Assembly (NCBI RefSeq): GCF_001194135.2
Contig: NC_068989.1
Coordinates: 3,498,035 to 3,554,924 of the forward strand
DNA: 56,890 nt
Direction of reading: 5' to 3'
DNA from: Octopus bimaculoides
Lineage: Eukaryota
Part shown: positions 3,146 to 30,277 of the stretch, piece by piece
Layout: each line of letters starts with the position of its first letter
How positions within the stretch are numbered: position 1 is the first letter of the stretch
Program-made: the position numbers and the translations under genes
The notes under the pieces: generated by a model
Told to the model about the DNA's origin: nothing
The model's database searches: none
Seen by the model: the letters and a program-made list of their open reading frames with translations, nothing else

Positions 3146-3578
3146 CAGGGTGCGATGGGTAAATTGTCACCATTTTATATTTTAAAATTCTGCACCATGT
3201 TACACAAGCAGGAGAACCCAGTCATGGTTGTCAGACAATTTCTGCAACCACATCACCCCTAACATTTGGTCACTTAACTCCCCAGATTGCAACCCCCTTG
3301 ATTATTATGCATGCGGCACAGTTGAGTGAAAGACCAACAAAACTCCTAGTAACACCAAAGATGAACTGAAGGCAAGGATTATGGCAGCATTCACCAATTT
3401 AAACAAGGAGACTGTCCAGAAGAGCTGTAGGAGATTCCAAAGTCGTCTGAGACCAACGACGATTTTATTGAATAGACTTTACTCTTTAGTATTTCAACTA
3501 AATATATCTGTTAAAATGAGATGTCATATTATTTTCAATTTTGTGTAATCTTGACGACAATCTATTCACTGCTCCCTG
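3146..3578 (+). mobile_element. Internally deleted Tc1/mariner-superfamily transposon
   Basis: TA-flanked imperfect TIRs (CAGGGTGCGATGGGTAAATTGTC / GACAATCTATTCACTGCTCCCTG); transposase C-terminus APCYTSRRTQSWLSDNF...WSLNSPDCNPLDYY...ELKARI with one stop. Confidence 0.85.
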
Positions 3579-4270
3579 TACATATATATGTGTGTTATCA
3601 ATAGTTTATCAAATAACTAACTTTCTCCTTAACCATAGTGAAGTTTGCTACTTAACATGGTGGTGGCAGTGTAGAGGTGTTTAGTGATAAGATGGTTGAA
3701 AACAGAGCAGATGACCTTTGCCTTTACTTGTATATATGTATGTATGCATACATAAGTGTCAATGAAGGTGTGAATGTGTGCATGTGTGTGTGTGTGTATG
3801 AGCAGGTATGCATGTGTGTGTGCAAATGCATGTATGTGTGCAAATGCAAGTGTGTATATGCATGTGTGTGTATGCATGTGTGTGTATGTATTTGTATATG
3901 TATGTATGTGTGTGAATGAATATAATTTGAGAGTGAGGGGCAGGAGATAGAAAAGGCGTCCAGCAGCTGATAGTTGAGGAGGAATGATGAGTGTGAGTGT
4001 GAGTGAGTGGAAGTAGCGTCAATAATATATCAAATAGCAATGAACCCGAACAGTGAGGTTTGATTGATGATTGTGGTGATGGCAGAAATCTTAATGGCTG
4101 TGATATAATAGCTATCGGGCTGGTGGTAGTTGAAGTGGTGCTGATAGCAATAAAATGGTGGTGGAAATGGTAGCATAGGAGCCATGATTGTGCTGGAAAT
4201 GGTAGCAAGAAATAGAAGCAATCACTCAACTAGGGAATGTGATTTTGCATGTGACATATGAATGTGAGTG

Positions 4271-4312
<42 letters not shown>

Positions 4313-4569
4313 AGTGGGAGCGCATATACATCTGATCTGTGGATTTATGAGCATCAGTGTGTGCGTGTGTATATAAGCATGACTGAGCAAATATATACAA
4401 GTCAGTGTGTATACGAGTTTAAACTTGTATGTGTATATAAGTGTTTGTATGTGTGTGTGTGTGTGTGTGTGTATGCATGTGCATGCGTATATATCAATGT
4501 TTGAGATGTGTGTTAAGTGCCTGCATTGAAATGTGTTCAGCACTGATTGTGCAAGTGTAAGCACTGCCG

Positions 4570-4985
4570 TACATGATTGTTGGTATCTGTTAAATTCTTC
4601 ATTAACTCTGCCACAGTCTGTCCTAAGCCGGGTCAAGAAATAAGGAAGGTTGGTCATAAGACTGGTACCTTTACTCTGAAAAAAGACCCTCCCTCTACAG
4701 CAGAAACCCCTATGAACTTTCCAAACGAAGAGAACTAGCATGGGAGAGAAGGACTAATTCAACATGGATTGACCATGAAGGGTCCAGATCAAAATTGAAA
4801 GGACATCCAGATCCTGGTTGCCCAGGTTTTCCAAAGTGAACAAACCTTAAACGTCAACACTTGGAATGTCTGCCCCTTATATCAAAGAAGAAAGCTTTGA
4901 TATAAAGTCATTCAAGAAATGGCCAGATACAATCTGGACATACTGGGATGGAGTGGAATGAAAACTTGTGGCCCATTGCCATGAG
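4570..4985 (+). mobile_element. 5' portion of an RTE-like LINE with the start of an APE endonuclease
   Basis: LNVNTWNVCPLYQRRKL*YKVIQEMARYNLDILGWSGMK resembles the (G)TWNVRTL...EMARYxLDILGxSExR APE N-terminus; upstream boundary approximate. Confidence 0.65.
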
Positions 4986-6539
4986 GCTGGAGGAACCAGC
5001 TGACCATGTGTGTTACTGTGATAAGAACAGGGACTGTGATGGAAATTATAACATGAGTGACAAGAGGAAGAGAAAGAAAGACAAATGGACTCTGTGGGCC
5101 TTGGTGAAGGTGGTGTGCAAGTAACTAGTTCAGAGGAACAGAGGCCATTATGGTAGCAATGGAAAAGACAGAGAGAGAGGAAAGAGTGAACCTGTGTGCT
5201 AGTTTTTACTGCTGTTGTCATTTAGTCATAAGTCAGTCCTGAGTGGGGAAAAGTACGATCAAGTATATTTTGAGATGCGACAAGCTTGTTCTGAGCATCT
5301 AGAATTACAAAGCTTAATGACTTCTTTTTTTAAGGAGGGTGCGATGTAACAGTTATTGAATTATTTCTAGCAGGTCAAGTTACCATAGAAACTCTTGTAC
5401 GGATTCCTGTAAGGAGTCTTTGTACTGAGTTTGGGAGTGAATCAGTTGTCAATAAGTTGAATGGTTCTCAGGTTTCTGTTTGTCCACATGCACATATACA
5501 GTTTACATTTATCAAAAGGCATGTATACTTATGTGTGTATATGTATATACATACATGAGTCCCACCCATGCCAGCATGGAAAGCGGACACTAAATGATGA
5601 TGAAGTGTGTACATGTATGTAGTCATGTTAAGTGTACACAATTATTTATACATATGAATATTCAGAACACAATTGTAGATATAAGCTTTTCAAGTATATA
5701 ATTGTGTCTGTATCGTGTAAGTATGTAATGGTTATTGGCCAGTATGCGACGTGTACAAATATGTTTTTAATGTTTTGTTCGTGTTTGCCTAATAATTCAA
5801 ATACATTATGTGCATACAGCACCTAACTTCCTAGAATACAATCATTACTGCAAATCTAATGCCCTTTGCAAAAGCTGCACAAGTTTTCCTGTAAATATCT
5901 TATTTTTTAAACAAACCTGTTTTCAAAAAAAAAAAAATAACGCCCTCAAACACACACAAAAAGATATTAATAAAAAAAATATCAAAAGTAAATAACTAAC
6001 CACTTTGTACACAGTTTGTAATAAAAGGTTTTTATAGTCAAGTACATTCTCCATTTAACACATTTTCATATCACCTTTCGGCACACCTGAAAGCCCATTG
6101 CTCTAATGCAAATTCTATCAAACCGGTAACCATTAGTACATTACTGTTTGTTGTGCTTCACCAAATATGTCTTTGCCATCATTGGCCACCAACACTCTGC
6201 AATTGTTTACAGGAAAGTTGAAAAGAACAGTGGCATTGCTAAAGTGATTAATATGAAACCTTTATCTACCTGCGAATGTGTTCCTGCTTTGGTGAGAATG
6301 TATTCCAATTCTAACGAGACTGAGTTGGGTGAGGTGTGAAAAGGAGAGCAAGTTGAGTTTAATATTGGAGGTATCAGAAAATTGAAATGATGTAAGTATT
6401 TGTAAAAAGGTGAAAAAGAGAAATACTTTTCCGCATGAATATATCTTTTATCATTTGTTTGTTTCGGTCATTAGACTGTGGCCATGTTGGGGCATCACCT
6501 TGAAGAATTTTAGTCAAACAAATCGACCTCAGTATTTAC

Positions 6540-16098: not shown

Positions 16099-16135
<37 letters not shown>

Positions 16136-17448
16136 ATTGTATTGTAGTTCGCTTGAAGCCTTGTGTATTGTTTGTAAAAAATAAAGTGTTTCGAATGACA
16201 CAACAATGCACTATAATAACCCCAATGGATTATAATAACTGTTGTAATTTAATCATCCATAGTCTGATATGATATTTCGGAATATCACACTTAATGCAAG
16301 TACATTAAGGGAAACCAAATTACCTGCGGTGGATTACAGCTAAGATGATGTGTACACAAACTATACAAGAAAAATCTACCACATCTAACTTTCTTTCGCA
16401 CGCTTTCGGATTTTATCGCCTGCCCCTCGAGGTAAGGTATTGTAAAATGTAACGGGTAAAAATAAATATTTCCTTAAAACTTCATGCATTGTTCATCTTT
16501 CACATCTTACAACTTGCCGTTACAATTTAATTCCAACCGTTGCACACACACACACATACACATATATATATATAAAAAAGCACAGAAACATCATACAACT
16601 CAACGGCAACATGTTCCATCGACCTGTTAGAAAATAGCAAACAAGTCTCTCTCTCTCTCTTCAAATCTCAACAGAATGAAAAAGTCACATTGGATAATAT
16701 ACTCCAACACACACAAGGTCTAAAAATAAGGCGGTTGTAGCTATAAAGCCTTTGATTACAAGTCTGCTTGTTCAAGAGCAATTTGGAGCTCACCAACCAC
16801 ACCTAATCAACGTGACATCCGTTTGCTTTGAGAGAAGGAATTCCCAATTCACTGACAGTACCTAAGGGAATAGTATGACCATTACACCTTTCTATTACCA
16901 TCCCTTCACCAAAATATAATTAAAATTACGGATACTGTTGTTATTATAATTTGTTTTTCTTTCGCTTTCTTTTTCTCATGGCATTTATTCGTTTTATAAA
17001 TAATTTCCCAAGACATATGTTACACATACATAAGCTCTTTCGACACACTAACAAGATCAGCAAAATATGTTTAATGAGTGGTTTGTCGAGCTTCTGTTAC
17101 ATCGGTGTCTAAAAATATTGTTGTCATCCAGCCGCAGGAAAATGCATCTACGATAAAGAGTAAGGTGTCTCTCGATCATTAGAGATTATCCAAGCAATCA
17201 GTAGTTAACAACTCCCTTAATGCTGTTTAGTTTAAACAATGAAAATAAAAAAAATAAAAAAGCAAACAAGAAAGAAAGGCTTATGCATCACCATCTGCTT
17301 CCCGACGTTTGCTTCCCAACTTCATGATTTCGTGGCCCTTTGAGCAAACGCCTTCATGGTACCTTGAACAAGTGTCTTGTACTATAGCCCTGGGTCAACC
17401 AAAGCCTTATGAGTGGATTAGGTAGATGGAAACTGAAAGAATCCCGCC

Positions 17449-17482
<34 letters not shown>

Positions 17483-19332
17483 AACGCCAAAACGAATTTG
17501 TGTGTCAGTATGTCACACTTTGACCCCCCCCCCCACTCTCTCACTATTCAATGACACTTCTGCTCCTCTTGCTGGGGTGAGAGACGGTGAGGACAGTAGT
17601 GGATTGACAGTTGTGATAGTAATGGGGTATGAGTTAGTAATAGTATGATTTGTAGTTGTGATAGAGGCGGAGGCGACGGTGATGGTGGTGGTGGTGGTGG
17701 TAGCTGAGGTGGTCAAGCATGACGATGACAGTAAGGGGTATGAAAAGACAGTGGTGGTGGTGATGGTGTTGGAGGAGGAGGCGGCGAAGTCAAGGTGTTG
17801 ATGGTGGTGGCGTCAAAAGTCTGAATGGTGTGTGTATAGCAGTTGTGGTGGGAACGGTGGTGGTACTGGTGATGGTTAAAAACAATCAACAGAAAGAGAG
17901 AGAGAGAAAGAAGGAAAGAAAAGTTAGACAGAAAAAAAAAATTGTACTGACCCCTGAATGGGAAGACAAAAAATGTTGTTTATCAAGAAGCTTTGCAATA
18001 AGTTCCAAGTTGACAAATTATATTATTGTTTTGACGAAAATTGTTCATTGCTTGAAATATATTGGTCAAGTTTAATAAAATTTAATAAGTATTCAATGCA
18101 TGGAGTGTCATTGTTGGGCTCAAGGCCCAATGAAGAACCCTCCACGGGAGCTAACTTAAATGCTGCCTGATGGGACAGCTTTTAAGCTAGTATGGCAACA
18201 AAACCATGAATCCTACATCTGTTTGACCAAGACTGTTCTGATTGCAGAACATTTTCGTTAATTTTTTTCTCTCTCCGTTTTCTTTCGTCTTCTTTCCCCC
18301 TCCAAATCCTTTCTGTCGAAGAGCGTAAGCTCGAAACGTCAAAGACTTTTCCATTTTTTCCGAGCGTTGAACTAATACACCTGTTTGTTGTTCCTCCACC
18401 TGTCTTCGTCTTTTGCTTTCTGTAAATTGTAAGTTTGAACTATATATATATATATATATATATATGCACATACACAAACATACATGCATACATACATACG
18501 TACATACATATATGTATGTGTTCTCCAACAGCTTGACAACCGGTGTTGGTCGGTTTACGTCCCCGTAACTTAGCGGTTCGGCATAAAGAGAACGATACGA
18601 TATGTACCAGACTTCTAAAAGGACAAGAAATACAGGGGCCAACTTGCTGGTCTAAAACCCCATTAAAGCGGTGTCTGCAGCAGAGTTACAGTCCAACAAC
18701 TAAAACAGGTGAAAGCCAAAAGTTAAGCGATGCAACCACGTACAAGTATTACATTTGAAATGATGAGCGTCGTACACTTACTAGTGGATGTTCATACACG
18801 TGCAAGCTTGTGTCTAATTACTTTTCCGGTTGCGAAACCATAGGTGCTATGCACAAGGATCCGTGTTTATGTATTATATATCTGTGTGAATGAGAACGTC
18901 AGTAGGCTTGCAATGGCAATAAAAAGACGTGTATTTGTATAAAGAGAGGAAATACAGTTGCGAGAGAAAGAAAACTGTCTGTCTGTCTCTCTCGGATTCT
19001 CTTTCGTACGCACACACCCAAATATATAAATGAGGTTACGCACATTAAGCAAGTGGTTGCAATCCAAAGCAAAAAAGATTACGAAATAATCAAAGAAAAG
19101 AAACAAACATTTCACATTCTCTATGACAGATGGAATGTCCAGCGAAACACAACTTTCCCGATGTAAAAAGGATAAACAGAGAAAACACCTCTATCTATCT
19201 ATCTGTCTGTCTGTCTGTCTATCTATCTATTGACATAATACACTTGAAGGTATGTATGTATGTATGTATGTATATATATACAGATAGATAACACGATAGA
19301 CAGACGAACAGAGACAGTACTGGAATTTCTCT

Positions 19333-19561
19333 CGCGGGTCGGTACTACTAAAGCAGCGCGGACCCGAACGCGCAGTCGCGCGTCCGCGCTAGCTAGTCGT
19401 GAGTGGTCGATCCTAACCCTAACCCTAACCCTAAACACGTATTCATTTGCATACGCGGGTTAGGGTTAGGGTTAGGGTTAGGTTCGACCACTCAAGACTA
19501 GCTAGCGCGGACGCGCGACTGCGCGTTCGGGTCCGCGCTGCTTTAGTAGTACCGACCCGCG
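19333..19561. repeat. 229-bp CpG-rich palindrome with inward (TAACCC)n/(GGGTTA)n telomeric repeats
   Basis: Arms 19333-19434 and 19460-19561 are reverse complements at 100/102 positions. Confidence 0.95.
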
Positions 19562-20429
19562 GGTCTCCCTTGATCACTACAAAGTCTTTTACCTCGTTTG
19601 TAAATCCAAACGCATAATTGTGTGCGCGCGCGCGCGTTTGTGTGTACGTATGCATTTGTATGTATGCATGCGTGTATGTATATGTGCATGAATGTATGAT
19701 GTATGTACAATGTATGTAAGTATACATGTGTATGTTTGTGAGGTATTGCTTAGTCCATATTCCATAGAATGAGAGAGCAGTGTTATGGTCAAAAGCATTC
19801 CACCCACGACCACTTCATCAAAAAGTATGTTAAACTACATAATTCATTATGCCTTTCCAGTTTTAAAACGTTACACAGTGATTTCAAAGGAAATATGGTT
19901 GCTGTTATTCCCAAAATGATAAGCTGTGAATAAGTTTGTTCGTTTGCCTGTAAATATAATGTACGCACAGTTTTACATACTTAACAGGACAAACAACCTG
20001 TGGATACTGTCAAAACACGATTTCTTTTTTTCTTTTACTTTTCGTACTATAAAAATGCAATCAGTCTCCGAATTAGTTACAAACTCTTCCACTATTGTCT
20101 ACTTAATAACAGAATCTGTGGCGTTCAAGCCTTCTATTTCTTGCAAGTAATTTATTTACATGCAGAATACCAGAGATATTTAAACATTGCGAGAACAATA
20201 CAATCACACACACACGCACGCGTGCGCGCAGAATTACAATAAATGTAAAAGCGATAAAAATATAATACCAGTAATATACCGAGGTCGATTTAATATACTT
20301 TACCTCTCCCCGTAACTGCTGGCCTTGTGCATAAGATATGAAATCATTCTCAAAGCAAAAACAAGAGATTTATCTGTGTCTGTCTGCATGTGTCTTCGTT
20401 TGTTAGTACAATCATACACACACACACAC

Positions 20430-20462
<33 letters not shown>

Positions 20463-22818: not shown

Positions 22819-22982
22819 ATGGTAAATGGCGCTTTAAGTGGTTCGTCTTTTGCAGCGATGTCAGCATGTTTGGAAGACGGTCGGAATGTATCGGGTTATC
22901 ACCACAAGAAGACATGGTCCATGTTGTATGCCGAAAGACTGAAGAATCTAGGAAGGTTCTCGCTGTATCTTAATGTCGACAG
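22819..22982 (+). CDS. UBE3D: UBE3D exon 1 (start uncertain: in-frame ATGs at 22819, 22858, 22921)
   Basis: Open frame ending MLYAERLKNLGRFSLYLNVDR; donor AG|GTTTAT at 22983, phase 2, matching the exon 2 acceptor; positioned like the vertebrate UBE3D N-terminus. Confidence 0.7.
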
Positions 22983-24344
22983 GTTTATATGATTTTCATT
23001 ATTCTTCATCGTTATATTTCTCCAATTTCTATCGCACACCGTAGAACAATTAATTTTGTTTTTATTGTATAAATAATCATTATGATGAAAATAACAATAG
23101 ATTATTAATTAATTAATTAATTATCATGAGTGTCTTAAAAATAAAAATAACATTCCACTTACAATATTTATAATTCAATTAAGACCTTTCTTTTATTTAT
23201 ATTTCAGTTAATAAAGAATTACATAAAAATGCATATAAGTAAATTGATATAAATACATGGAAATATCCGGTAAAACCGAATTAGTGTCGAAATCTTTATT
23301 ATAAATAGTTTTCTTCTTCGTATATCGTGTAATCAAAACATGATGTGAGGTTCACGTGTGTCTGGTAACATAATTAATTTTGAGTAACTTTGTGAAAATT
23401 AAATAGTATTTTTATCATCAGAATTGCTATTATTAGCAAGAGTGGCTGGAGCTTTGGACTAAATTTCCCTTCAAAGAATTTTAGTTCCCTTCGGTCTGGC
23501 TTAAAACCCGCGGGCTTTTCGTTTAGTCTCTAAACCAAATCGTTCCGTAACAATGCGGTACGCCGCGGATTTTTAAAACTGCAATTTAAGGTTTTTCAAA
23601 ATCCACACTAACTACTTGAGCCTTATGAAAATGTGTTACTCATAATGTCTGGAGTATTTTTTTATTTTGATAATTTAAAAACTTTAAAACAGATTTTAAA
23701 GAATTTCCTATGTGTAGTGCGCTCGTAATTTTACTTGATTTCCACTGAGTCTAAAAGAGTGGTTCTCAACCATTTTCTGCTTATGAACCTCTTTGATATC
23801 TATTTTACTCTACTGGTCCCTCATATCCATACAATCTTTCATCTTGCTTCAGTCATTTGAATGCTGCCATGCTGGGGCACCGTCTTGAAAGGTTTTAGTC
23901 GAACAAATCGACCCCGGGACTTAATTTTTTAAGCCTGGTATTTATTCTACACACCAACACCGGTTGTCAGGCGGTGGTGGGAGGACAAACACACACACCA
24001 AAGATGCACACACCTATCTATATAAATAAATAAATAATCGAAAAATATTTAACAATATTTCTTAAAATAAAAACACAACTTATCGAAGAATTGCTGTAAA
24101 CTCTTCCATAAGTTGTGTCTTTATTTTTGACTCATTTGATTAAATCATCTACCACTCCCCCTCACCATACCACTGCTGTTGATGTTTATCAATCCAAGGA
24201 AGAGGGAAAATAAAATCCAAACCAATTCTGATGGGATTCAAAATCAATTTTCACTTGGTCTGTTGTGCTTTTACTTCTGTTATTCCTCTCTGCCTTAATA
24301 CAATAACTTAGGATAACGATGATTACTTTTATATTTTTCTACAG

Positions 24345-24677
24345 GATCCAAAATGAAACGGGCTACAGCAACATTAGAGTCCAAGTAGATTCTGGGTCAG
24401 TCAGCATCACCACTGGACAAGGACGTGGCCGAGAATGGACTTGGAAGCTGGGCATTCCAGAGGTTCAGTTTCATCCTGCTTCTTGTCGAGGTCTTCGCTG
24501 TTCCCGCCATGGAGAGTTGCAGTGTACCCTGCAGACCTCTTTACCCAACCTGCTGATGTCTCCAGCACCTCCCACCACTTCCAGCCAACTGTCTTCCCAT
24601 CTGGTGGCTTCCCTTTCCAAGGGAACAGACAGCTGTAGATGTCGTATTTGTGGTAATGTTATTCTACCAGCCGAAAG
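24345..24677 (+). CDS. UBE3D: UBE3D exon 2
   Basis: Acceptor TTTTTCTACAG|G, donor AAG|GTAAAC; PEVQFHPASCRGL...CRCRICGNVI resembles my recollection of human PAEVRLVPSSCRGL...YCQSCGEVI. Confidence 0.9.
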
Positions 24678-24904
24678 GTAAACTAACTTCTCTTAGATTA
24701 TCATTTATTTCACTTCCTCACCTGAGGAATAATCGTTTCCTTGATCAGCTCTAATTCATTGACATCATCCACATATGCCACTTTTTTAGTTTAAAGGGAT
24801 AACCCTCAATTTCTCATTTTTGAAGTGGTACATACAGATCTATATTTAAGAGATGAGGAATTATTTACATTTGACGGATATTTGTCCTCATCTTGTTTGT
24901 TGTT

Positions 24905-24950
24905 AACACAATGTTTTGGCTGATATACCCTCCAGCCTTCATCAGGTGTC
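24905..24950 (-). ncRNA. Hammerhead ribozyme copy, probably inactive
   Basis: Core GAAA mutated to AAAA and ACGU to ACAU (CpG-type decay). Confidence 0.55.
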
Positions 24951-25185
24951 TTGGGGAAATTTCAAACCTGGGTTCTCATTCCTAGGGTATTTTTTCGATA
25001 TTATTATTATTATTATTATTATTATCATCATCATTATTATTATTATTCAGGTTAATGCTGAGCATTCCAGAATTTCAGTTCCATCCTGTTTGATTCCAGG
25101 CAGTGACCTGAATAATAGAAATAATAATAATAACAACATTGAAAAATACCTTAGGAATGAGAATCCAGGTTTTTAATTTCGCCAA

Positions 25186-25231
25186 GACACCTGATGAAAG
25201 CTGGAGGGTATATCAGCTGAAACGTTATGTT
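25186..25231 (+). ncRNA. Hammerhead ribozyme copy, core intact, stem I weakened
   Basis: GACAC-CUGAUGA-A-AGCUG-(10 nt)-CAGCU-GAAA-CGU-U-AUGUU. Confidence 0.6.
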
Positions 25232-25369
25232 AACAACAAACAAGATGAAGACAAAAGTCCATCAAATGTAAATAATGCAGTACATACAGAGTCGGTACTT
25301 ACAGAAGAGATGAAAGGAAACAACCTTGACAGAGCATGATACTGAATAGTTCTGATTAGTGGTCTTTCA

Positions 25370-25720
25370 CTCTAATCTTCCTGCAGATGTCATATGTTGC
25401 AGCAATCTAGGCTCTGAAAATGGTCCCAGAATCAGCTGCTGTGAGGTCATCTGCCAAAGTGTTGGTGCTCAGCTTTATTAAAAGATTTTGATTAATCTAA
25501 GTTGACAGGAACCCACTCGTGCCAGACTCTGTATCCACATTTCAACACTTTCTTTGATGTATTATATGGAGTGGAAATTGTTGTTCATTCGATCTATTCA
25601 AGGCGGCATGTGTCTACTCATTACCAATCAGCACGGCGACAAGTGTCAACCTCGTAGACCTTGGCTAAAATCTTGAATTCTGGGGTCTCTCTTGATCTGG
25701 TCCTTATCTCAGCAGTGCTA
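25370..25720 (-). mobile_element. Decayed L1/Tx1-like LINE RT fragment in UBE3D intron 2
   Basis: Minus-strand translation across frameshifts gives EFKILAKV...IGNE*THA...LADDLTAADSGTIFRA*IAATYDICRKIRV, resembling L1/Tx1 RT domains 1-3. Confidence 0.55.
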
Positions 25721-26663
25721 CCACTCCTTGGTTCACAACTGGGGATTCTCCAGTTCTGCTGCCAGTCACAGTGGATATCTGCCTAGAGGCCTCCAAACAA
25801 GTCTGACTTTGGTCAGCCTGGGTTAAAGTGGAAGACATTTGCCCAAGGTACCATCCAGTGGAACTAAACTTGGAACCATTGGTTGGGAAGCAAACTTCCT
25901 ACCACACAGTCACGCTTCTGCCTACATATTCATGTACTATGTGTGTGTGTGTATATATGCATACATATATATATATATACTCGCGCACACACACACACAC
26001 ACACAGGACCACAAACCACAGACAGTTTCTGATGAGCCTTCGAGCAGAAACAGAATTTATGTTGTTGGAGCCGTGGTTATGGATTAACCTTGTCTGTTGG
26101 TGTAAGATGACCAGAACACCAGTTAAACGAGGAAGATTTTTCAGTTCCATTCCTTGTATTTAATAGTTACACTGATTACTGGTACGTCCATGGCTTGGAC
26201 TAAAATCGACGTAGGTTTTTCTAAGATACCCGAAGGTCACTAGTTTCGGTGAAGGAAGCAATCAATTAAAAATGATTCTGGTATTCGGCTGATAATTTAA
26301 TTTCACGGTCCCTGAAGAATGAAAAGGCAAAAAATCAAACGCAGATCAGAAGTGATCTAAGGGGAATAACTATCATCGAGCTGTTTCAGAAAGGGAGATT
26401 AATCAGATCAGATGTAAATTTCTATTTTGGTTCAGTTATTTGGTAGTAATATTCCACGATCCATAATCTTTGGAGGTTGCGAAAGAAAACTCATTTTCGT
26501 ATCGTGTGAGCATGAACTTGTTTTAAGACTGAAAAAGAAAGATGGACTGATCACTGCTAGAATGCTTTTCTTTGATCATGGATCTATTCAGCTTGACTTG
26601 TGGCTAAACAATGATGGCAGACATTCATTATTTCTTTTTCTTTTTCGTTTTTATTTCCTGTAG

Positions 26664-26956
26664 AAAATTCCGAAGAGTTCTTCCCCTACCATCAGAAGCC
26701 TGGATGGAAATGTCTGGCAACCATTTCTGTCATCAACATGAAACGAGTGGTTCTTCAAAGAAGTCTAAAACCAGTTCAGTTTCTAGTACCAGTTTGTCAC
26801 CCAAACCTGGTGATTGTCTGGTCAGTGATTTGTACTTTCTAGTGAATTCTACTGATCTCAGCCCTACGTCTCTCATCAAAAAGATGGACTCCACTCAGTT
26901 GGTGTGCAGAAGATGTCGAACAGAGCTTGGTACTTGCTTACCATCCTGTGGAGATG
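26664..26956 (+). CDS. UBE3D: UBE3D exon 3 (HECT_2 domain core)
   Basis: Acceptor TTCCTGTAG|A, donor G|GTGAGT; RVLPLPSEAW...FCHQH...PKPGDCLVSDLYFLVN...VCRRCRTELG matches UBE3D motifs (RVLPLPSENW, CCH, DCFIGDSFFLVN, ICKRCKVMLG). Confidence 0.95.
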
Positions 26957-27581
26957 GTGAGTTAATTTCTCAGATTTTGAATTATCATTTTCTCACTCTT
27001 GTCTTTCTCTTCTCTCTGAAAATGTGTGATATGTATGTGTGTGTGTGTATATATATATATATAGAGAGAGAGAGAGGAGAGTATTGTAGTTCGCTAGAAG
27101 CATTGTGTATTGTTTGTGAAATATAACATGTCTTGAATGGCACAACAATGCATAATGGGCCATAATAACTGTTATAATTCAATTATTCATTGTCTGATAT
27201 AATATTTTCGAATATAAAAATTCCTTCTTCAGGCATTAAGACAAGAGGTTATGTCCCTTCCTTGATGTTTTTAGATTTGAACACATCCAAAGGACGTTCT
27301 TGCTTTCTAATTGCAAAACAGTCTTAGTTGATTGAAAGGTTCACATACATACGTTTTGTCTTCCATTTTGCCTTTGCTGCATGCTTCAGACAGCTAACTG
27401 CAGCAGATTTTCTACGGCTGGTACCATCCATTATCTGTTTCTAAGCATAATATTTCTCCGTGACTAACATGCTTTCACAGAATTTTGGAAATGAAGGATA
27501 ACGATTTACACCTATTGTATGATGTCAAGACAAAGCAACACAAACATACACATACCCACATGTCCATACTCTCTCACACAC

Positions 27582-27615
<34 letters not shown>

Positions 27616-27696
27616 TGATAATCTTCTTTCAGTTTTCATTGTTAGCTTTTTGCATATTATTATTATTAATATTATTGTTGTTGTTGTTGTTTATAG

Positions 27697-27805
27697 CCTC
27701 TCAAGATAACGAGCCTGGCAGATTTGTTTGCAAGATTTATTCCTACACCATCAACATGACGAATCTAATCAACTCTGTAACTGAACCTCTCACTGGTATA
27801 AACAG
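27697..27805 (+). CDS. UBE3D: UBE3D exon 4
   Basis: Acceptor TTATAG|CC (phase 1), donor AG|GTGAGT (phase 2); ASQDNEPGRFVCKIYSYTINMTNLINSVTEPLTGINR. Confidence 0.85.
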
Positions 27806-28534
27806 GTGAGTTATTATACTTTCCTTCTTCTTCTTTTATTGGTGCTTCCAGTCATTTGCCAGTTGCCATTGTGGGGTACAGAGCTTTAGAACTTGAAAGG
27901 TTGGAAAGCAAGGTCAACCTCAATGGGATTTGAACTCAGAGTGCCGTGTGCTGGGGCAAAATATTTTGCACACTTCATTTCACTTTGCTCCAGTCCATTC
28001 AGCTGTAATGATTAATCTGTGAAGGGCTAGCTTCTCATCCAGGGGGAATGTTGTGATCTTGGTCACTTATATGCTATGGAAATTAGATAACCGTCCTTAT
28101 GAGTCTTATGTCTTGGGGTTGTTGATGATGATGATGATGTGATCTTATATGTTCTTTTATTTTGACTTCTATTTCTAGTAGGTCATTCGCTCAGGCATAC
28201 ATATAGTGCCATTATGTTAAACTGTCGTATGTCCTAATTTTTATTTTTGCTTGCAATAACAGGTTCTTTTGGTCTGCAGATGCCAAGATATGAAAATTGC
28301 CAAAATGTAGTCCAATGGTTTTGCTATGAAATGGTGAAAGTGATTTTTCGTTTTCTGAAAAAAGAACGTTTTGGACTTACAACACTTTTGCATAATAGCA
28401 ACAATATATATAATCCTGCACAAGTGCATGTGTCTTGTATATGTATGTCATATTTATCAGTACAGCTCTATGTATCGATGTATATATAATGGTGTTTATA
28501 CGTAGTGCATACTTTGATATTATTCTGCTTTTAG

Positions 28535-28658
28535 GTGGACCTTTACGGAAGAGTCTTATTTGGCCAGTTATCTCTTAGAACAGAGTCGAATCTACACCAG
28601 TTTCAAATTCATCATTGAATCTTCAAAATCCGACAACCAGCCAGCCATCACCTGCTTG
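28535..28658 (+). CDS. UBE3D: UBE3D exon 5
   Basis: Acceptor CTTTTAG|G, donor TTG|GTATGC; RWTFTEESYLASYLLEQSRIYTSFKFIIES aligns with UBE3D ...SVIAQCLVQLSSARSTFRFTI. Confidence 0.9.
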
Positions 28659-29106
28659 GTATGCTATAAGTTTGTGCTTTGTTTTTCGTAAAAATTGACA
28701 TTGTTATTATGATCACAGAGAATGTAACTCAAATACAGGAGAGATGGTCATGTTCTCAATAACATAAAAGAATCATTATTATTGCTGCAACTAAGGTAGC
28801 AAAGCTGACAGAATCCTTAACATCCCAGATAAAACGCTTAGCAACATCTCGCCCATCTTTGTCCCGAGTTCAAATTCTGTTGAGGTCAACTTTGCTCTTC
28901 ACCCTTTCAGGGTCAATGTAATCGACTTACCCCTTCCTCAATTGCTGGCCTTGTGCCAAAATAAGAAAGGCTGCATCTCCCCTCAGCATCCGAACTGCCA
29001 CACCCACTTGTCTTCTCCCACGGTGCTGGCACTTATCAAGTATCTTAGCATCATGGAGACCATGCCTCTCGATATGTATATAAAGATAAACATTTATTTC
29101 TTGTAG

Positions 29107-29267
29107 GTTTGGTTGTTAGATACCATTCAAGTGTATGAACTCAACGATATTCCAACTGCTGCTGAACATAAGCATGTCCACGAACTGTCCTTGGAACCAG
29201 AAGTACGACAGAAAATTCTTTATCAGGCTGAAATAAAGGGTGTTCCTAAGTCTTCCAATAAAGAGAG
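29107..29267 (+). CDS. UBE3D: UBE3D exon 6
   Basis: Acceptor TTCTTGTAG|G, donor AG|GTAAAA; VWLLD...QKILYQ matches the LWLLN...VKVLYQ motifs. Confidence 0.9.
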
Positions 29268-29309
29268 GTAAAAAAAATTTAGTTTTATCTTTTATTTTAA
29301 TACAGTTCT

Positions 29310-29588
29310 ATATTTAAGAGATGATGAATTATGTACATTATTTACATTTGACGGATGTTTGTCCTCATCTTGTTTGTTGTTGACACAACGTTTCGGCTGA
29401 TATACCCTCCAGCCCTCATCAGGTGTCTTGGGGATATTTTGAACCTGGGTTATCATCGTCGTTGTTGTTGTTTTTGTTGCTCAGGTTACTGCCTGGCATC
29501 GAACTCGGACGTATGCCGTACTGGTTAAGAGTGCGGGCTACTAACCCCAGGATTCCAAGTTCGATTCCAGGCAATGACCTGAATAATC
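29310..29588. mobile_element. Same family: hammerhead-bearing arm plus tRNA-like centre, in UBE3D intron 6
   Basis: Arm matches 24842-25000; centre has A-box-like TGCCGTACTGG (29514-29524) and B-box GTTCGATTC (29559-29567) between 25-bp inverted repeats. Confidence 0.85.
29382..29427 (-). ncRNA. Minimal type I hammerhead ribozyme (Penelope-type)
   Basis: Minus strand GACAC-CUGAUGA-G-GGCUG-(10 nt)-CAGCC-GAAA-CGU-U-GUGUC: 5-bp stem I, full core, 5-bp stem II, palindromic ACGU in place of stem III. Confidence 0.8.
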
Positions 29589-29823
29589 AGTTTTTGTTCT
29601 CAGAGACAAATGTAAAGGCAACCAACAAGTCAAAAACTGTTATTCAAAAATCTGCCATTTACAGTCAAAACTTATACATTTGAGGCTTCCACATCAGGGA
29701 AGGCTATTTCTCTTATACTGTCTGGTATGATTCGAGTCACATCAGGAAACCTACCCATGCCAGCATGAAGAACAGACATTAAATGATGATGATGATGTGT
29801 TATTTCTGTTTTGTTTTTCTCAG

Positions 29824-29977
29824 GAAAATTGCTGAAGAAGTTCTGAAACTCTGGAAGTCAGATGTTTCTGTTCATATGCTGACCCTTTCACCTCAACTGA
29901 CCACAACGTTGCTACGCTATTTAATTTGCAGCACCAATTCTTTGCCATTCTCCTGTCGAAGGATTAATGAATTTCAT
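29824..29977 (+). CDS. UBE3D: UBE3D exon 7
   Basis: Acceptor TTTTCTCAG|G, donor CAT|GTAAGA; LWKSDVSVHMLTLS...STNSLPFSCRRINEFH matches LWESDISVHPLTLP...SNANLPSSLRRVNSFQ. Confidence 0.95.
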
Positions 29978-30253
29978 GTAAGAACAATTTTTTTTCTCTA
30001 TTTGTTTAAATTGCACTGATAATAATGAAAATAACAAAGGAAATAGGTTTGGTTTGGTCAAAATTAGTGTGGCTGTCTGTCATAGCTTTGCTTGTTCAGA
30101 AATGACTTGTATCAAAACAACTTGTACCATAGATTTCAGATCAAAATCCATTAACTGATACTTCAACATCTCATTAATATATTTCTATAATCTGTTCAAA
30201 TGACAATTTATTTGAAGATATTAAATCTCTCTTTTTTTTTTGTCATTTTTCAG

Positions 30254-30277
30254 GTTGGTTTCTTACGTCCACCCTAA
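30254..30277 (+). CDS. UBE3D: UBE3D exon 8 (terminal coding exon)
   Basis: Acceptor CATTTTTCAG|GTT; VGFLRPP* corresponds to the vertebrate terminal VAFLKM*. Confidence 0.85.
   Translation, partial: VGFLRPP

What the first reader, a model, noticed from the sequence alone, without database searches (positions are those of the whole stretch)
19333..19565. Near-perfect CpG-rich palindrome with inward-facing telomeric repeats and an octamer motif at its apex
Seen in sequence: 102-bp arms match at 100 positions and their inner ends are (TAACCC)~4 and (GGGTTA)~4. The 25-nt spacer also pairs (CGTAT/ATACG), leaving an 8-nt apex that overlaps ATTTGCAT (19445-19452), the POU octamer motif. Each arm has its own sub-hairpins (CGGGTC..GACCCG, GCGCGGAC..GTCCGCGC, CTAGCTAG). 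The right end continues into a 12-bp palindrome GACCCGCGGGTC, as if another inverted arm began there. CpGs are undecayed in an AT-rich, CpG-poor background, so the insert is young or constrained. No target-site duplication is evident. Inference: it may be a telomere-repeat-bearing fold-back transposon, a captured hairpin end of a linear replicon (rolling-hairpin-like junction), or a telomere-fusion/healing scar. It could extrude a cruciform; telomeric G-strands lie on opposite strands, the plus-strand GGGTTA run being long enough for a G-quadruplex. It lies ~3.3 kb upstream of UBE3D.
Basis: partly seen in the sequence, partly recalled or inferred. Interest (0 to 1): 0.8.

Follow-up and report, generated by a model that had tools for sequence, protein, structure and literature searches.

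The report
Young fold-back transposon carrying telomere repeats
The palindrome is real. It is a small, non-coding, hairpin-shaped mobile DNA element that inserted upstream of UBE3D in Octopus bimaculoides after that lineage split from O. vulgaris and O. sinensis. It is an ordinary kind of element with one unusual feature: telomere repeats inside its inverted arms.

Summary

The window is Octopus bimaculoides chromosome CM046609.1. I rebuilt the neighbouring UBE3D protein from its exons and used it to reach the orthologous loci in O. sinensis and O. vulgaris. Both lack the palindrome and carry one clean copy of the site, ...TCTCT-CGCG-AGTCTTCC.... In O. bimaculoides, CGCG flanks the insert on both sides.

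So this is a lineage-specific insertion with a target-site duplication of 4 bp. The duplication could be read as up to 8 bp (CGCGGGTC), because the element's first four bases equal the host's next four. The element proper is about 222 bp (19337-19558), has 5'-GG...CC-3' tips and no coding capacity.

A telomere-fusion scar is excluded because the repeat orientation is wrong and a duplication is present. A captured viral hairpin is disfavoured.

The best reading is a non-autonomous fold-back MITE. It has Merlin-like hallmarks, but membership is not shown. No relatives were found in any collection I could search, and genome-wide copy number could not be tested.

The parts
19333..19336 (.). Left copy of the target-site duplication, CGCG
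   Evidence: O. vulgaris and O. sinensis carry a single CGCG at the orthologous site.
19337..19558 (.). The inserted element in its symmetric reading: 222 bp, tips 5'-GGTCGGTAC...GTACCGACC-3'
   Evidence: No BLAST hit and no shared 16-mer in the orthologous loci L125 and L126. Flank homology ends near 19230 on the left, apart from the few bases TCTCTCGCG directly before the insert, and resumes at 19558 on the right.
19337..19340 (.). GGTC: either the first 4 nt of the element or the last 4 nt of an 8-bp duplication (CGCGGGTC)
   Evidence: The same 4 nt follow the right-hand CGCG at 19563-19566, where the sister species have AGTC. This is why the duplication length is ambiguous between 4 and 8 bp.
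19337..19434 (+). Left inverted arm: about 75 nt of unique GC-rich sequence followed by the telomeric array
19412..19434 (+). C-strand telomeric array CC(TAACCC)3TAA at the inner end of the left arm
19435..19459 (.). Apex or spacer ACACGTATTCATTTGCATACGCGGG, with mini-stem 19438-42/19451-55 and 8-nt loop 19443-50; it contains ATTTGCAT at 19445-52
   Evidence: Octamer frequency in the window is at chance level.
19457..19482 (+). G-strand telomeric array GGG(TTAGGG)3TTAGG, with four GGG runs
19460..19558 (-). Right inverted arm
19559..19562 (.). Right copy of the target-site duplication, CGCG, followed by host GGTCTCCCTTGATCAC
19281..19327 (.). Roughly 47-nt segment specific to O. bimaculoides just left of the site. 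It is an imperfect inverted copy of the upstream TCTA/TCTG microsatellite and may or may not belong to the insertion event.
   Evidence: Absent from both sister species. Inverted repeat I2.
22819..30277 (+). Neighbouring host gene UBE3D (8 coding exons, 453 aa), used as the anchor for orthology
   Evidence: The spliced product is exactly XP_014770243.1. HECT_2 domain.

Best explanation
The feature is one copy of a non-autonomous cut-and-paste (terminal-inverted-repeat) DNA transposon of the fold-back or MITE type. It is about 222 bp and consists almost entirely of two 98-nt inverted arms joined by a 25-nt apex. It inserted into a CGCG site 3.3 kb upstream of UBE3D in the O. bimaculoides lineage. 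Shown: it is an insertion, its target is duplicated, it has sharp symmetric ends beginning 5'-GG, it encodes nothing, and it is younger than the split from O. vulgaris and O. sinensis. Inferred: a transposase supplied in trans by an autonomous relative recognised the arms, made staggered cuts at the target, and gap repair produced the 4-8 bp duplication. Inferred further: the hexamer arrays near the inner ends of the arms act as subterminal repeats, that is, as binding sites for the transposase or an accessory or host protein, rather than being a product of telomere biology. The Merlin superfamily is the leading candidate: it has 5'-GG tips, long TIRs and an 8-bp duplication, and it is abundant in this species. 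That assignment is a lead and has not been demonstrated.
For: Collinear orthologous loci were obtained from O. sinensis (L125) and O. vulgaris (L126). The flanks align on both sides, but the palindrome gives no hit, shares no 16-mer, and those loci contain no telomeric 12-mers. The empty sites read ...TTTCTCT-CGCG-AGTCTTCCTTGATCAC (O. vulgaris) and ...TATCTTT-CGCG-AGTCTTCC... (O. sinensis). The filled site reads ...TTTCTCT-CGCG-[GGTCGGTAC...GTACCGACC]-CGCG-GGTCTCCCTTGATCAC. The arms differ at 2 of 102 positions, against 7-9% substitutions between species in the flanks. Six-frame Pfam scans of the whole gap-free contig 16099-20462 found no domain. The literature describes Merlin with TIRs of 24-462 bp, a conserved 5'-GG and 8-9 bp duplications, and reports 191 Merlin sequences in O. 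bimaculoides (PMC8101967). A genuine octopus Merlin examined here has 5'-GGC tips, imperfect tip pairing, short direct repeats near its tips, and 8-bp duplications. Other long-armed fold-back elements occur in the octopus DNA I read.
Against: Only one copy is known. No autonomous partner was found, and the two octopus Merlin families I looked at share no arm sequence with it. At GC 60% it is unlike the usual AT-rich MITE. A 4-bp duplication alone could also arise when foreign DNA is joined into a staggered break. The duplication length, and therefore the superfamily, is ambiguous. Only two lineages were compared, so precise loss in the O. vulgaris/O. sinensis ancestor is not formally excluded.
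Confidence: 0.65

Rival explanations
1. A snap-back or hairpin DNA fragment was captured by end-joining at a staggered chromosome break. The fragment could have been the terminal hairpin or terminal repeat of a linear viral or plasmid-like replicon, or a fold-back replication by-product. On this reading the 4-bp duplication comes from fill-in of 4-nt overhangs and not from a transposase.
For: The whole insert is one hairpin with a tiny 8-nt loop and two bubble mismatches. Its composition is foreign. It is single-copy as far as can be seen. Telomeric repeats a short distance inside genome termini, in the same polarity as these arms, are seen in large herpesvirus-sized IMG/VR records. Two small Rep-encoding viral contigs carry telomere-repeat hairpins.
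Against: No viral or other coding remnant lies in the surrounding 4.3 kb, and tblastn finds no Rep or Cap. The unique arm sequence has no significant match in 120 telomere-repeat-bearing viral loci or in three direct scans of viral contigs. The clean duplication, perfectly symmetric tips and unaltered empty site are what transposition gives; end-joining usually leaves small deletions or filler.
Confidence: 0.15
2. A retroelement insertion primed from both ends of a break, as in Penelope-like elements, left two head-to-head, 5'-truncated copies of an element's 3' end.
For: Penelope-like elements often form inverted 5'-truncated copies, prefer microsatellite targets, and some carry reverse-complement telomeric repeats (PMC8557442). 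This insert sits between TATG/TCTA and GC/GT microsatellites.
Against: There is no reverse transcriptase or GIY-YIG remnant. There is no hammerhead ribozyme or other Rfam family above threshold. Both copies would have to be truncated at the same base. The literature places reverse-complement telomeric repeats at the 3' end of endonuclease-lacking members, which would put the 3' ends at the centre of this palindrome and not next to the host DNA, the opposite of what priming from the break requires.
Confidence: 0.07
3. An assembly or gap-closing artefact in the short-read O. bimaculoides assembly.
For: The window is a draft with eight N gaps. Palindromes are hard to assemble from short reads. 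The chromosome-level record is identical to the window, so it is not independent evidence.
Against: An artefactual fold-back would copy adjacent genomic sequence, but both arms here are foreign to the flanks. The arms differ at two positions and the apex is asymmetric. The insert is bracketed by a duplication of a sequence that is single-copy in two long-read sister assemblies.
Confidence: 0.03
4. A scar of telomere fusion or of chromosome healing by telomerase.
For: Perfect TTAGGG-type repeats are present on both strands.
Against: The orientation is (TAACCC)n...(GGGTTA)n, the reverse of the (TTAGGG)n(CCCTAA)n that end-to-end fusion produces (established telomere polarity). The flanks are collinear with two sister species, with no rearrangement. 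The insert has a duplicated target.
Confidence: 0.01

Closest known systems
Merlin-superfamily MITEs (IS1595/IS1016-related DDE transposons)
   Same: 5'-GG...CC-3' tips. Arm length lies within the reported 24-462 bp. An 8-bp direct repeat (CGCGGGTC) can be read at the junctions. The superfamily is unusually abundant in O. bimaculoides (PMC8101967). A real octopus Merlin has imperfect tips and short direct repeats near its ends.
   Different: There is no transposase. There is no arm similarity to the two octopus Merlin families examined. The duplication may be only 4 bp. The element is GC- and CpG-rich, and its subterminal repeats are telomeric hexamers.
Foldback-type elements (Drosophila Foldback, Galileo; Mutator/P-related)
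   Same: Almost the whole element is two long inverted arms with tandem short repeats inside them and a minimal centre. MULEs have long TIRs and 8-10 bp duplications (PMC5225508).
   Different: The arms are far shorter than in classical Foldback or Galileo. The tandem repeats lie only at the inner end. The duplication is at most 8 bp. No related transposase is known.
Telomere-bearing elements of ciliates (TBE1/Tec; Tc1/mariner family)
   Same: A DNA transposon that carries the host's telomeric repeat inside its inverted ends (PMC4724952 for TBE; otherwise my own knowledge).
   Different: In the ciliate elements the repeats are at the outer tips, and the elements encode proteins. Here the repeats are about 75 nt inside the tips, at the apex, in a metazoan, and the element is non-coding.
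Endonuclease-lacking Penelope-like elements (Athena, Coprina)
   Same: [quoted passage not shown]
   Different: There is no RT and no hammerhead ribozyme. The location is internal and not telomeric. The symmetric ends with a fixed duplication point to DNA transposition.
Fusion-type interstitial telomeric sequence
   Same: Two telomeric arrays in opposite orientation at an internal site.
   Different: The opposite polarity, only about 4 repeats on each side, non-telomeric arms outside them, a duplicated target, and intact synteny.

Membership tests
Non-autonomous TIR DNA transposon (MITE / fold-back) | Terminal inverted repeats reaching the element ends | tested here: met
   98-nt arms (102 nt including the duplicated CGCG, which is itself a palindrome) matching at all but 2 positions; the tips GGTCGGTAC / GTACCGACC pair perfectly.
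Non-autonomous TIR DNA transposon (MITE / fold-back) | Target-site duplication flanking the insert and a single copy at an empty site | tested here: met
   CGCG lies on both sides in O. bimaculoides and occurs once in O. sinensis and O. vulgaris. The length is ambiguous between 4 and 8 bp.
Non-autonomous TIR DNA transposon (MITE / fold-back) | Small size (under 800 bp) and no coding capacity | tested here: met
   222 bp. There is no room for a protein-coding gene between the arms (25-nt apex), and no Pfam hit in six frames of 16099-20462.
Non-autonomous TIR DNA transposon (MITE / fold-back) | Multiple dispersed copies forming a family | not testable with these tools
   No whole-genome search is available. 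There were 0 further copies in about 215 kb of octopus DNA, and no predicted ORF anywhere carries the arm peptides.
Non-autonomous TIR DNA transposon (MITE / fold-back) | AT-rich composition typical of MITEs (PMC5199201) | tested here: not met
   GC 0.60 and CpG o/e 1.56.
Merlin superfamily | 8- or 9-bp target-site duplication | tested here: inconclusive
   CGCGGGTC is present on both sides, but its last 4 nt can equally be the element's own tip.
Merlin superfamily | Conserved terminal 5'-GG | tested here: met
   The tips are GGTC... or GGTA... under either reading. The octopus Merlin tips are GGCG / GGCA.
Merlin superfamily | DDE_Tnp_IS1595 transposase, or arms shared with an element that encodes one | tested here: not met
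   There is no ORF in the element. There is no similarity to L127-L129 or to the Merlin-bearing contig L130 beyond telomere-like hexamers. Only two families were sampled.
Mutator-like / Foldback elements | Long TIRs with an 8-10 bp duplication | tested here: inconclusive
   The TIRs are long. The duplication is at most 8 bp and possibly 4 (PMC5225508).
hAT superfamily | 8-bp duplication fitting nTnnnnAn and short TIRs (my own knowledge) | tested here: not met
   CGCGGGTC has G at position 2 and T at position 7. The arms are 98 nt.
Fusion-type interstitial telomeric sequence | Head-to-head (TTAGGG)n(CCCTAA)n polarity | tested here: not met
   The observed polarity is (TAACCC)n...(GGGTTA)n.
Integrated hairpin or terminal repeat of a linear virus (parvovirus-like, herpesvirus-like) | Adjacent viral genes, or sequence match to a viral terminus | tested here: not met
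   No domains. No Rep or Cap. No match in viral contigs.
Penelope-like retroelements | RT (with or without GIY-YIG) reading frame and a hammerhead ribozyme in the terminal repeat | tested here: not met
Helitron / Helentron | No target duplication; 5'-TC...CTRR-3' ends; 3' subterminal hairpin (my own knowledge) | tested here: not met
   A duplication is present, and the ends are GG...CC.

The most novel reading that the evidence does not exclude
A family of metazoan DNA transposons may carry functional host telomere repeats inside its inverted arms. These could serve as docking sites for telomere-binding (Myb/TRF-type) proteins, or as seeds that would let a broken chromosome be capped. That would be an animal counterpart of the ciliate telomere-bearing elements. 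A second, older fold-back element with a telomere-like apex on another O. bimaculoides contig hints that the association recurs in this genome.
Probability: 0.08. Interest if true: 0.7.

Novelty: new variant of a known kind. Interest (0 to 1): 0.38.

Why it matters
The finding turns an odd-looking palindrome into a dated, sharply bounded insertion with a known empty site. That makes it a useful marker of recent DNA-transposon activity in octopus. It also warns that inverted telomeric arrays inside chromosomes need not record telomere events. If the telomere repeats in the arms prove to be a family trait, they would be an unusual example of a transposon borrowing the host's chromosome-end sequence. 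The insert places a long perfect hairpin, a CpG-rich block and a G-quadruplex-capable run 3.3 kb upstream of a gene. That could matter for local replication stability or regulation, but nothing here shows any such effect.

Tried and rejected
- **Exact arm segments against public collections.** Viral contigs gave nothing. Prokaryote genomes gave nothing. Metagenomes gave one 24-nt chance match inside bacterial coding DNA.
- **Whole insert by BLAST.** Searches against plasmids and phages matched only the telomeric hexamers.
- **Arm-derived peptides.** No candidate was found among 5.8 billion protein clusters. ORFs spanning the palindrome are not on record.
- **Non-coding RNA and tRNA.** Rfam gave only sub-threshold miRNA-like hairpin matches. 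No tRNAs were found.
- **Literature.** Searches by arm sequence strings and by topic found no prior description.
- **Architecture scan.** A scan for inward telomeric arrays found two Rep-encoding viral contigs. They share nothing else with the insert, and the window has no Rep or Cap.
- **Telomere-bearing viral loci.** The unique arm sequence gave no significant match against 120 such loci; the best E-value was 0.09, in GC-rich herpesvirus repeats.
- **First UBE3D search.** It missed the octopus orthologues. The 90% cluster merges UBE3D with the neighbouring gene through a fused O. vulgaris model, so its representative is the other protein. An exact cluster look-up solved this.
- **Merlin test.** The two octopus Merlin families sampled do not share the arms.

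Full report
**1. The observation**

- The repeat finder gives arms 19333-19434 and 19460-19561, 102 nt, 98% complementary, 25 nt apart.
- The two mismatches are 19399/19495 and 19411/19483.
- As single-stranded DNA the 251-nt stretch folds into one long hairpin of -149.8 kcal/mol. Shuffles average -44 kcal/mol, giving z = -28.6.
- Telomeric hexamer arrays occur only here in the window, where none are expected by chance.
- The arm sequence has no other copy in the window.
- The 229 bp hold 32 CpG (o/e 1.56, GC 0.60). This is the densest CpG stretch in a window whose background is o/e 0.72 and GC 0.38.
- The mini-stem CGTAT/ATACG, the octamer ATTTGCAT and the 12-bp palindrome at the right edge are all present.

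Two embellishments do not hold up statistically. The octamer occurs 4 times in the window against 5.2 expected. Single arms fold little better than shuffles, with z of -2.2 and -0.8.

**2. Where the window comes from**

A 557-aa single-exon ORF in the window lies on NCBI record GCA_001194135.2 CM046609.1, which is Octopus bimaculoides. The window is identical to that record over 27,459 nt, so the two are not independent evidence. The palindrome sits at 3,517,367-3,517,595 of that chromosome. The gene downstream is UBE3D, which carries a HECT_2 domain. I spliced its eight coding exons (22819-30277). The 453-aa product is exactly XP_014770243.1.

**3. The decisive comparison**

The same protein cluster holds the O. 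sinensis and O. vulgaris orthologues. Their genomic loci, each with 10 kb upstream, could be fetched:
- L125 from GCA_006345805.1 (O. sinensis);
- L126 from GCA_951406725.2 (O. vulgaris).

Both loci are collinear with the window on either side of the palindrome:
- window 18450-19230 aligns to L125 4119-4923 and L126 4229-4992;
- window 19558-20434 aligns to L125 5300-6228 and L126 5381-6288.

The palindrome itself has no hit in either locus. Neither locus shares a single 16-mer of the element, and neither contains a telomeric 12-mer.

The sister species read as follows:
- O. vulgaris: ...GTATGTTTCTCT-CGCG-AGTCTTCCTTGATCAC...
- O. sinensis: ...GTATGTATCTTT-CGCG-AGTCTTCCTTGATCAC...
- O. bimaculoides...GGAATTTCTCT-CGCG-[GGTCGGTAC ... 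GTACCGACC]-CGCG-GGTCTCCCTTGATCAC....

The palindrome is therefore an insertion, bounded to the base and flanked by a duplicated host CGCG. The 12-bp palindrome at the right edge is element end GACC, plus duplicated CGCG, plus host GGTC.

The element's first four bases (GGTC) equal the host's next four bases. For that reason the duplication can be read as anything from 4 bp (CGCG, giving a perfectly symmetric 222-bp element, 19337-19558) to 8 bp (CGCGGGTC, giving an element whose right tip is 4 nt longer than its left).

**4. Age**

Substitution divergence in the flanks between O. bimaculoides and the other two species is 7-9%. The arms differ by 2%. If the arms were identical at insertion and have not been homogenised since, the insertion is several-fold younger than the species split. 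That agrees with its absence from the sister species. Neither arm difference is a CpG transition, so the CpGs have not decayed measurably. The comparison involves only two lineages. A precise loss in the O. vulgaris/O. sinensis ancestor is therefore less parsimonious but not excluded.

**5. What the insert is not**

*Telomere-fusion or healing scar.* End-to-end fusion gives (TTAGGG)n(CCCTAA)n. Here the C-rich strand is on the left and the G-rich strand on the right. Synteny is intact, and the target is duplicated.

*Recognisable virus-derived sequence.*
- Six-frame Pfam scans of the whole gap-free contig 16099-20462 find no domain.
- The window has no Rep or Cap by tblastn.
- The unique arm sequence has no match in IMG/VR, by three direct scans and by BLAST against 120 telomere-repeat-bearing viral loci.
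- It has no match in prokaryote genomes, plasmids or phages.
- Its only metagenome hit is a 24-nt chance match.

*Other classes.* No Rfam family reaches threshold, and there is no hammerhead ribozyme. No predicted protein anywhere in 5.8 billion clusters carries the arm-derived peptides.

*Assembly artefact.* An artefact is very unlikely. The arms are foreign to the flanks, they differ at two positions, and a real duplication brackets them.

**6. What the insert most likely is**

Sharp symmetric inverted ends, a duplicated target, a clean empty site, small size and no coding capacity together define a non-autonomous cut-and-paste DNA transposon, in other words a fold-back MITE. The mechanism is inferred and not shown. 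A transposase supplied in trans would bind the arms and make staggered cuts at the target. Repair of the single-stranded gaps would then create the duplication.

The tips begin 5'-GG. The arms are long. An 8-bp direct repeat can be read at the junctions. The literature describes Merlin elements with TIRs of 24-462 bp, a conserved 5'-GG and 8-9 bp duplications, and singles out O. bimaculoides as unusually rich in them, with 191 sequences (PMC8101967).

To test this lead I took an O. bimaculoides Merlin transposase fragment from that paper's supplement and retrieved octopus relatives.
- One family has three loci that encode an identical 305-aa transposase. Its copies span about 8.7 kb and are 98-99.6% identical in DNA.
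- That family has roughly 354-nt TIRs, tips GGCGATG / GGCATAG, short direct repeats near the tips, and 8-bp duplications: GCAAATCT at one locus and CAAGGCTT at another.

So the hallmarks fit. However, neither this family nor the Merlin-bearing contig L130 shares arm sequence with the palindrome. Merlin membership therefore remains a lead. MULE/Foldback elements (8-10 bp duplications, PMC5225508) and the superfamilies with 4-bp duplications remain possible.

**7. The telomeric repeats**

Their role is unknown. My preferred reading is that they are subterminal repeats of the kind many transposons use as protein-binding sites. They would then have nothing to do with telomere maintenance.

One observation bears on this. 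The second is a roughly 730-bp, older element on contig L130 (5565-6294). Its arms are 76-93% identical. Its degenerate telomere-like repeats run in the opposite polarity, and its arms are unrelated to those of the palindrome. This could be coincidence, or it could hint at a recurrent association.

**8. Rivals**

*Capture of a hairpin DNA at a staggered break.* This could also give a 4-bp duplication. It is favoured by the single-copy status and the hairpin-like whole. It is disfavoured by the perfect tips, the clean site and the absence of any source. I give it 0.15.

*A doubly primed Penelope-like insertion.* This reading fits the microsatellite setting and the inverted arrangement (PMC8557442). 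It fails on reverse transcriptase, ribozyme and polarity. I give it 0.07.

*Artefact* (0.03) and *telomere scar* (0.01) are minor.

**9. Verdict**

The feature is real and young, and it is a mobile-element insertion. It is a new variant of a known kind, notable for the telomere repeats inside its arms and for having no detectable relatives in the collections I could reach. Interest is moderate to low. The one result that would raise it is a genome-wide family of such elements.

Noticed in passing
L130:5565-6294 (O. bimaculoides unplaced contig LGKD02092233.1): A second fold-back element of about 730 bp, with nested arms 76-93% identical. Its apex (about 5890-6020) consists of degenerate telomere-like repeats in the opposite polarity: TTAGGG-like on the left and CCCTAA-like on the right. 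Its arms are unrelated to the window palindrome. It lies 1.5 kb downstream of a Merlin transposase ORF (3223-4056), and a third partial arm copy sits at 4505-4563.
   Followed up: partly
L002:3183-3285 and L003:2134-2190 (IMG/VR contigs): Two small contigs (3.4 and 2.6 kb) that encode a Rep (CRESS-DNA-virus-like) carry hairpins built from inward telomeric repeats just downstream of rep. In a separate scan for telomeric arrays, 82 of 120 hits were contigs under 6 kb, many from one sample series (33000200xx).
   Followed up: partly
L127:265-8996, L129:252-8997, L128 (O. sinensis and O. vulgaris): A Merlin element of about 8.7 kb that looks recently active. Its three copies encode an identical 305-aa DDE_Tnp_IS1595 protein and are 98-99.6% identical in DNA. 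It has roughly 354-nt TIRs, an internal 344-nt inverted repeat, and 8-bp duplications GCAAATCT (L127) and CAAGGCTT (L129).
   Followed up: partly
window:19281-19327: A segment of about 47 nt specific to O. bimaculoides lies directly left of the insertion site. It is an imperfect inverted copy of the TCTA/TCTG microsatellite 60-100 nt upstream, and both sister species lack it. It could be an independent indel or a by-product of repair at the insertion.
   Followed up: partly
L125:about 4924-5230 and L126:about 4993-5250: Left of the site, the sister species carry a T-rich insertion of about 200 nt plus longer TATG/GT microsatellites that O. bimaculoides lacks. This intergenic stretch turns over quickly.
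   Followed up: no
window:24860-25276 and window:about 29290-29600: An inverted repeat with 135-nt arms (90% identical, 147-nt spacer) lies in a UBE3D intron, and a related partial copy lies in another intron. This is an AT-rich, MITE-like family unrelated to the palindrome.
   Followed up: no
window:22819-30277 and 37271-38944; P0007: The O. vulgaris annotation (CAI9728106.1, 1004 aa) fuses UBE3D with the downstream 557-aa NHL-repeat-like gene. This fusion merges the two genes into one 90% protein cluster and hid the octopus UBE3D orthologues from the homology search.
   Followed up: yes
window:37271-38944: A single-exon 557-aa ORF with cysteine-rich N-terminus and a weak NHL-repeat match (16.8 bits, below the cut-off). 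It is conserved in O. sinensis (555 aa) and present in a Logan transcript-sized contig.
   Followed up: no
L125:1-6759 (minus strand): In O. sinensis the gene upstream of UBE3D encodes an FCH/HR1/SH3 (TOCA-like) protein on the opposite strand. The palindrome therefore lies in a divergent intergenic region. I did not look for the corresponding exons in the window.
   Followed up: no
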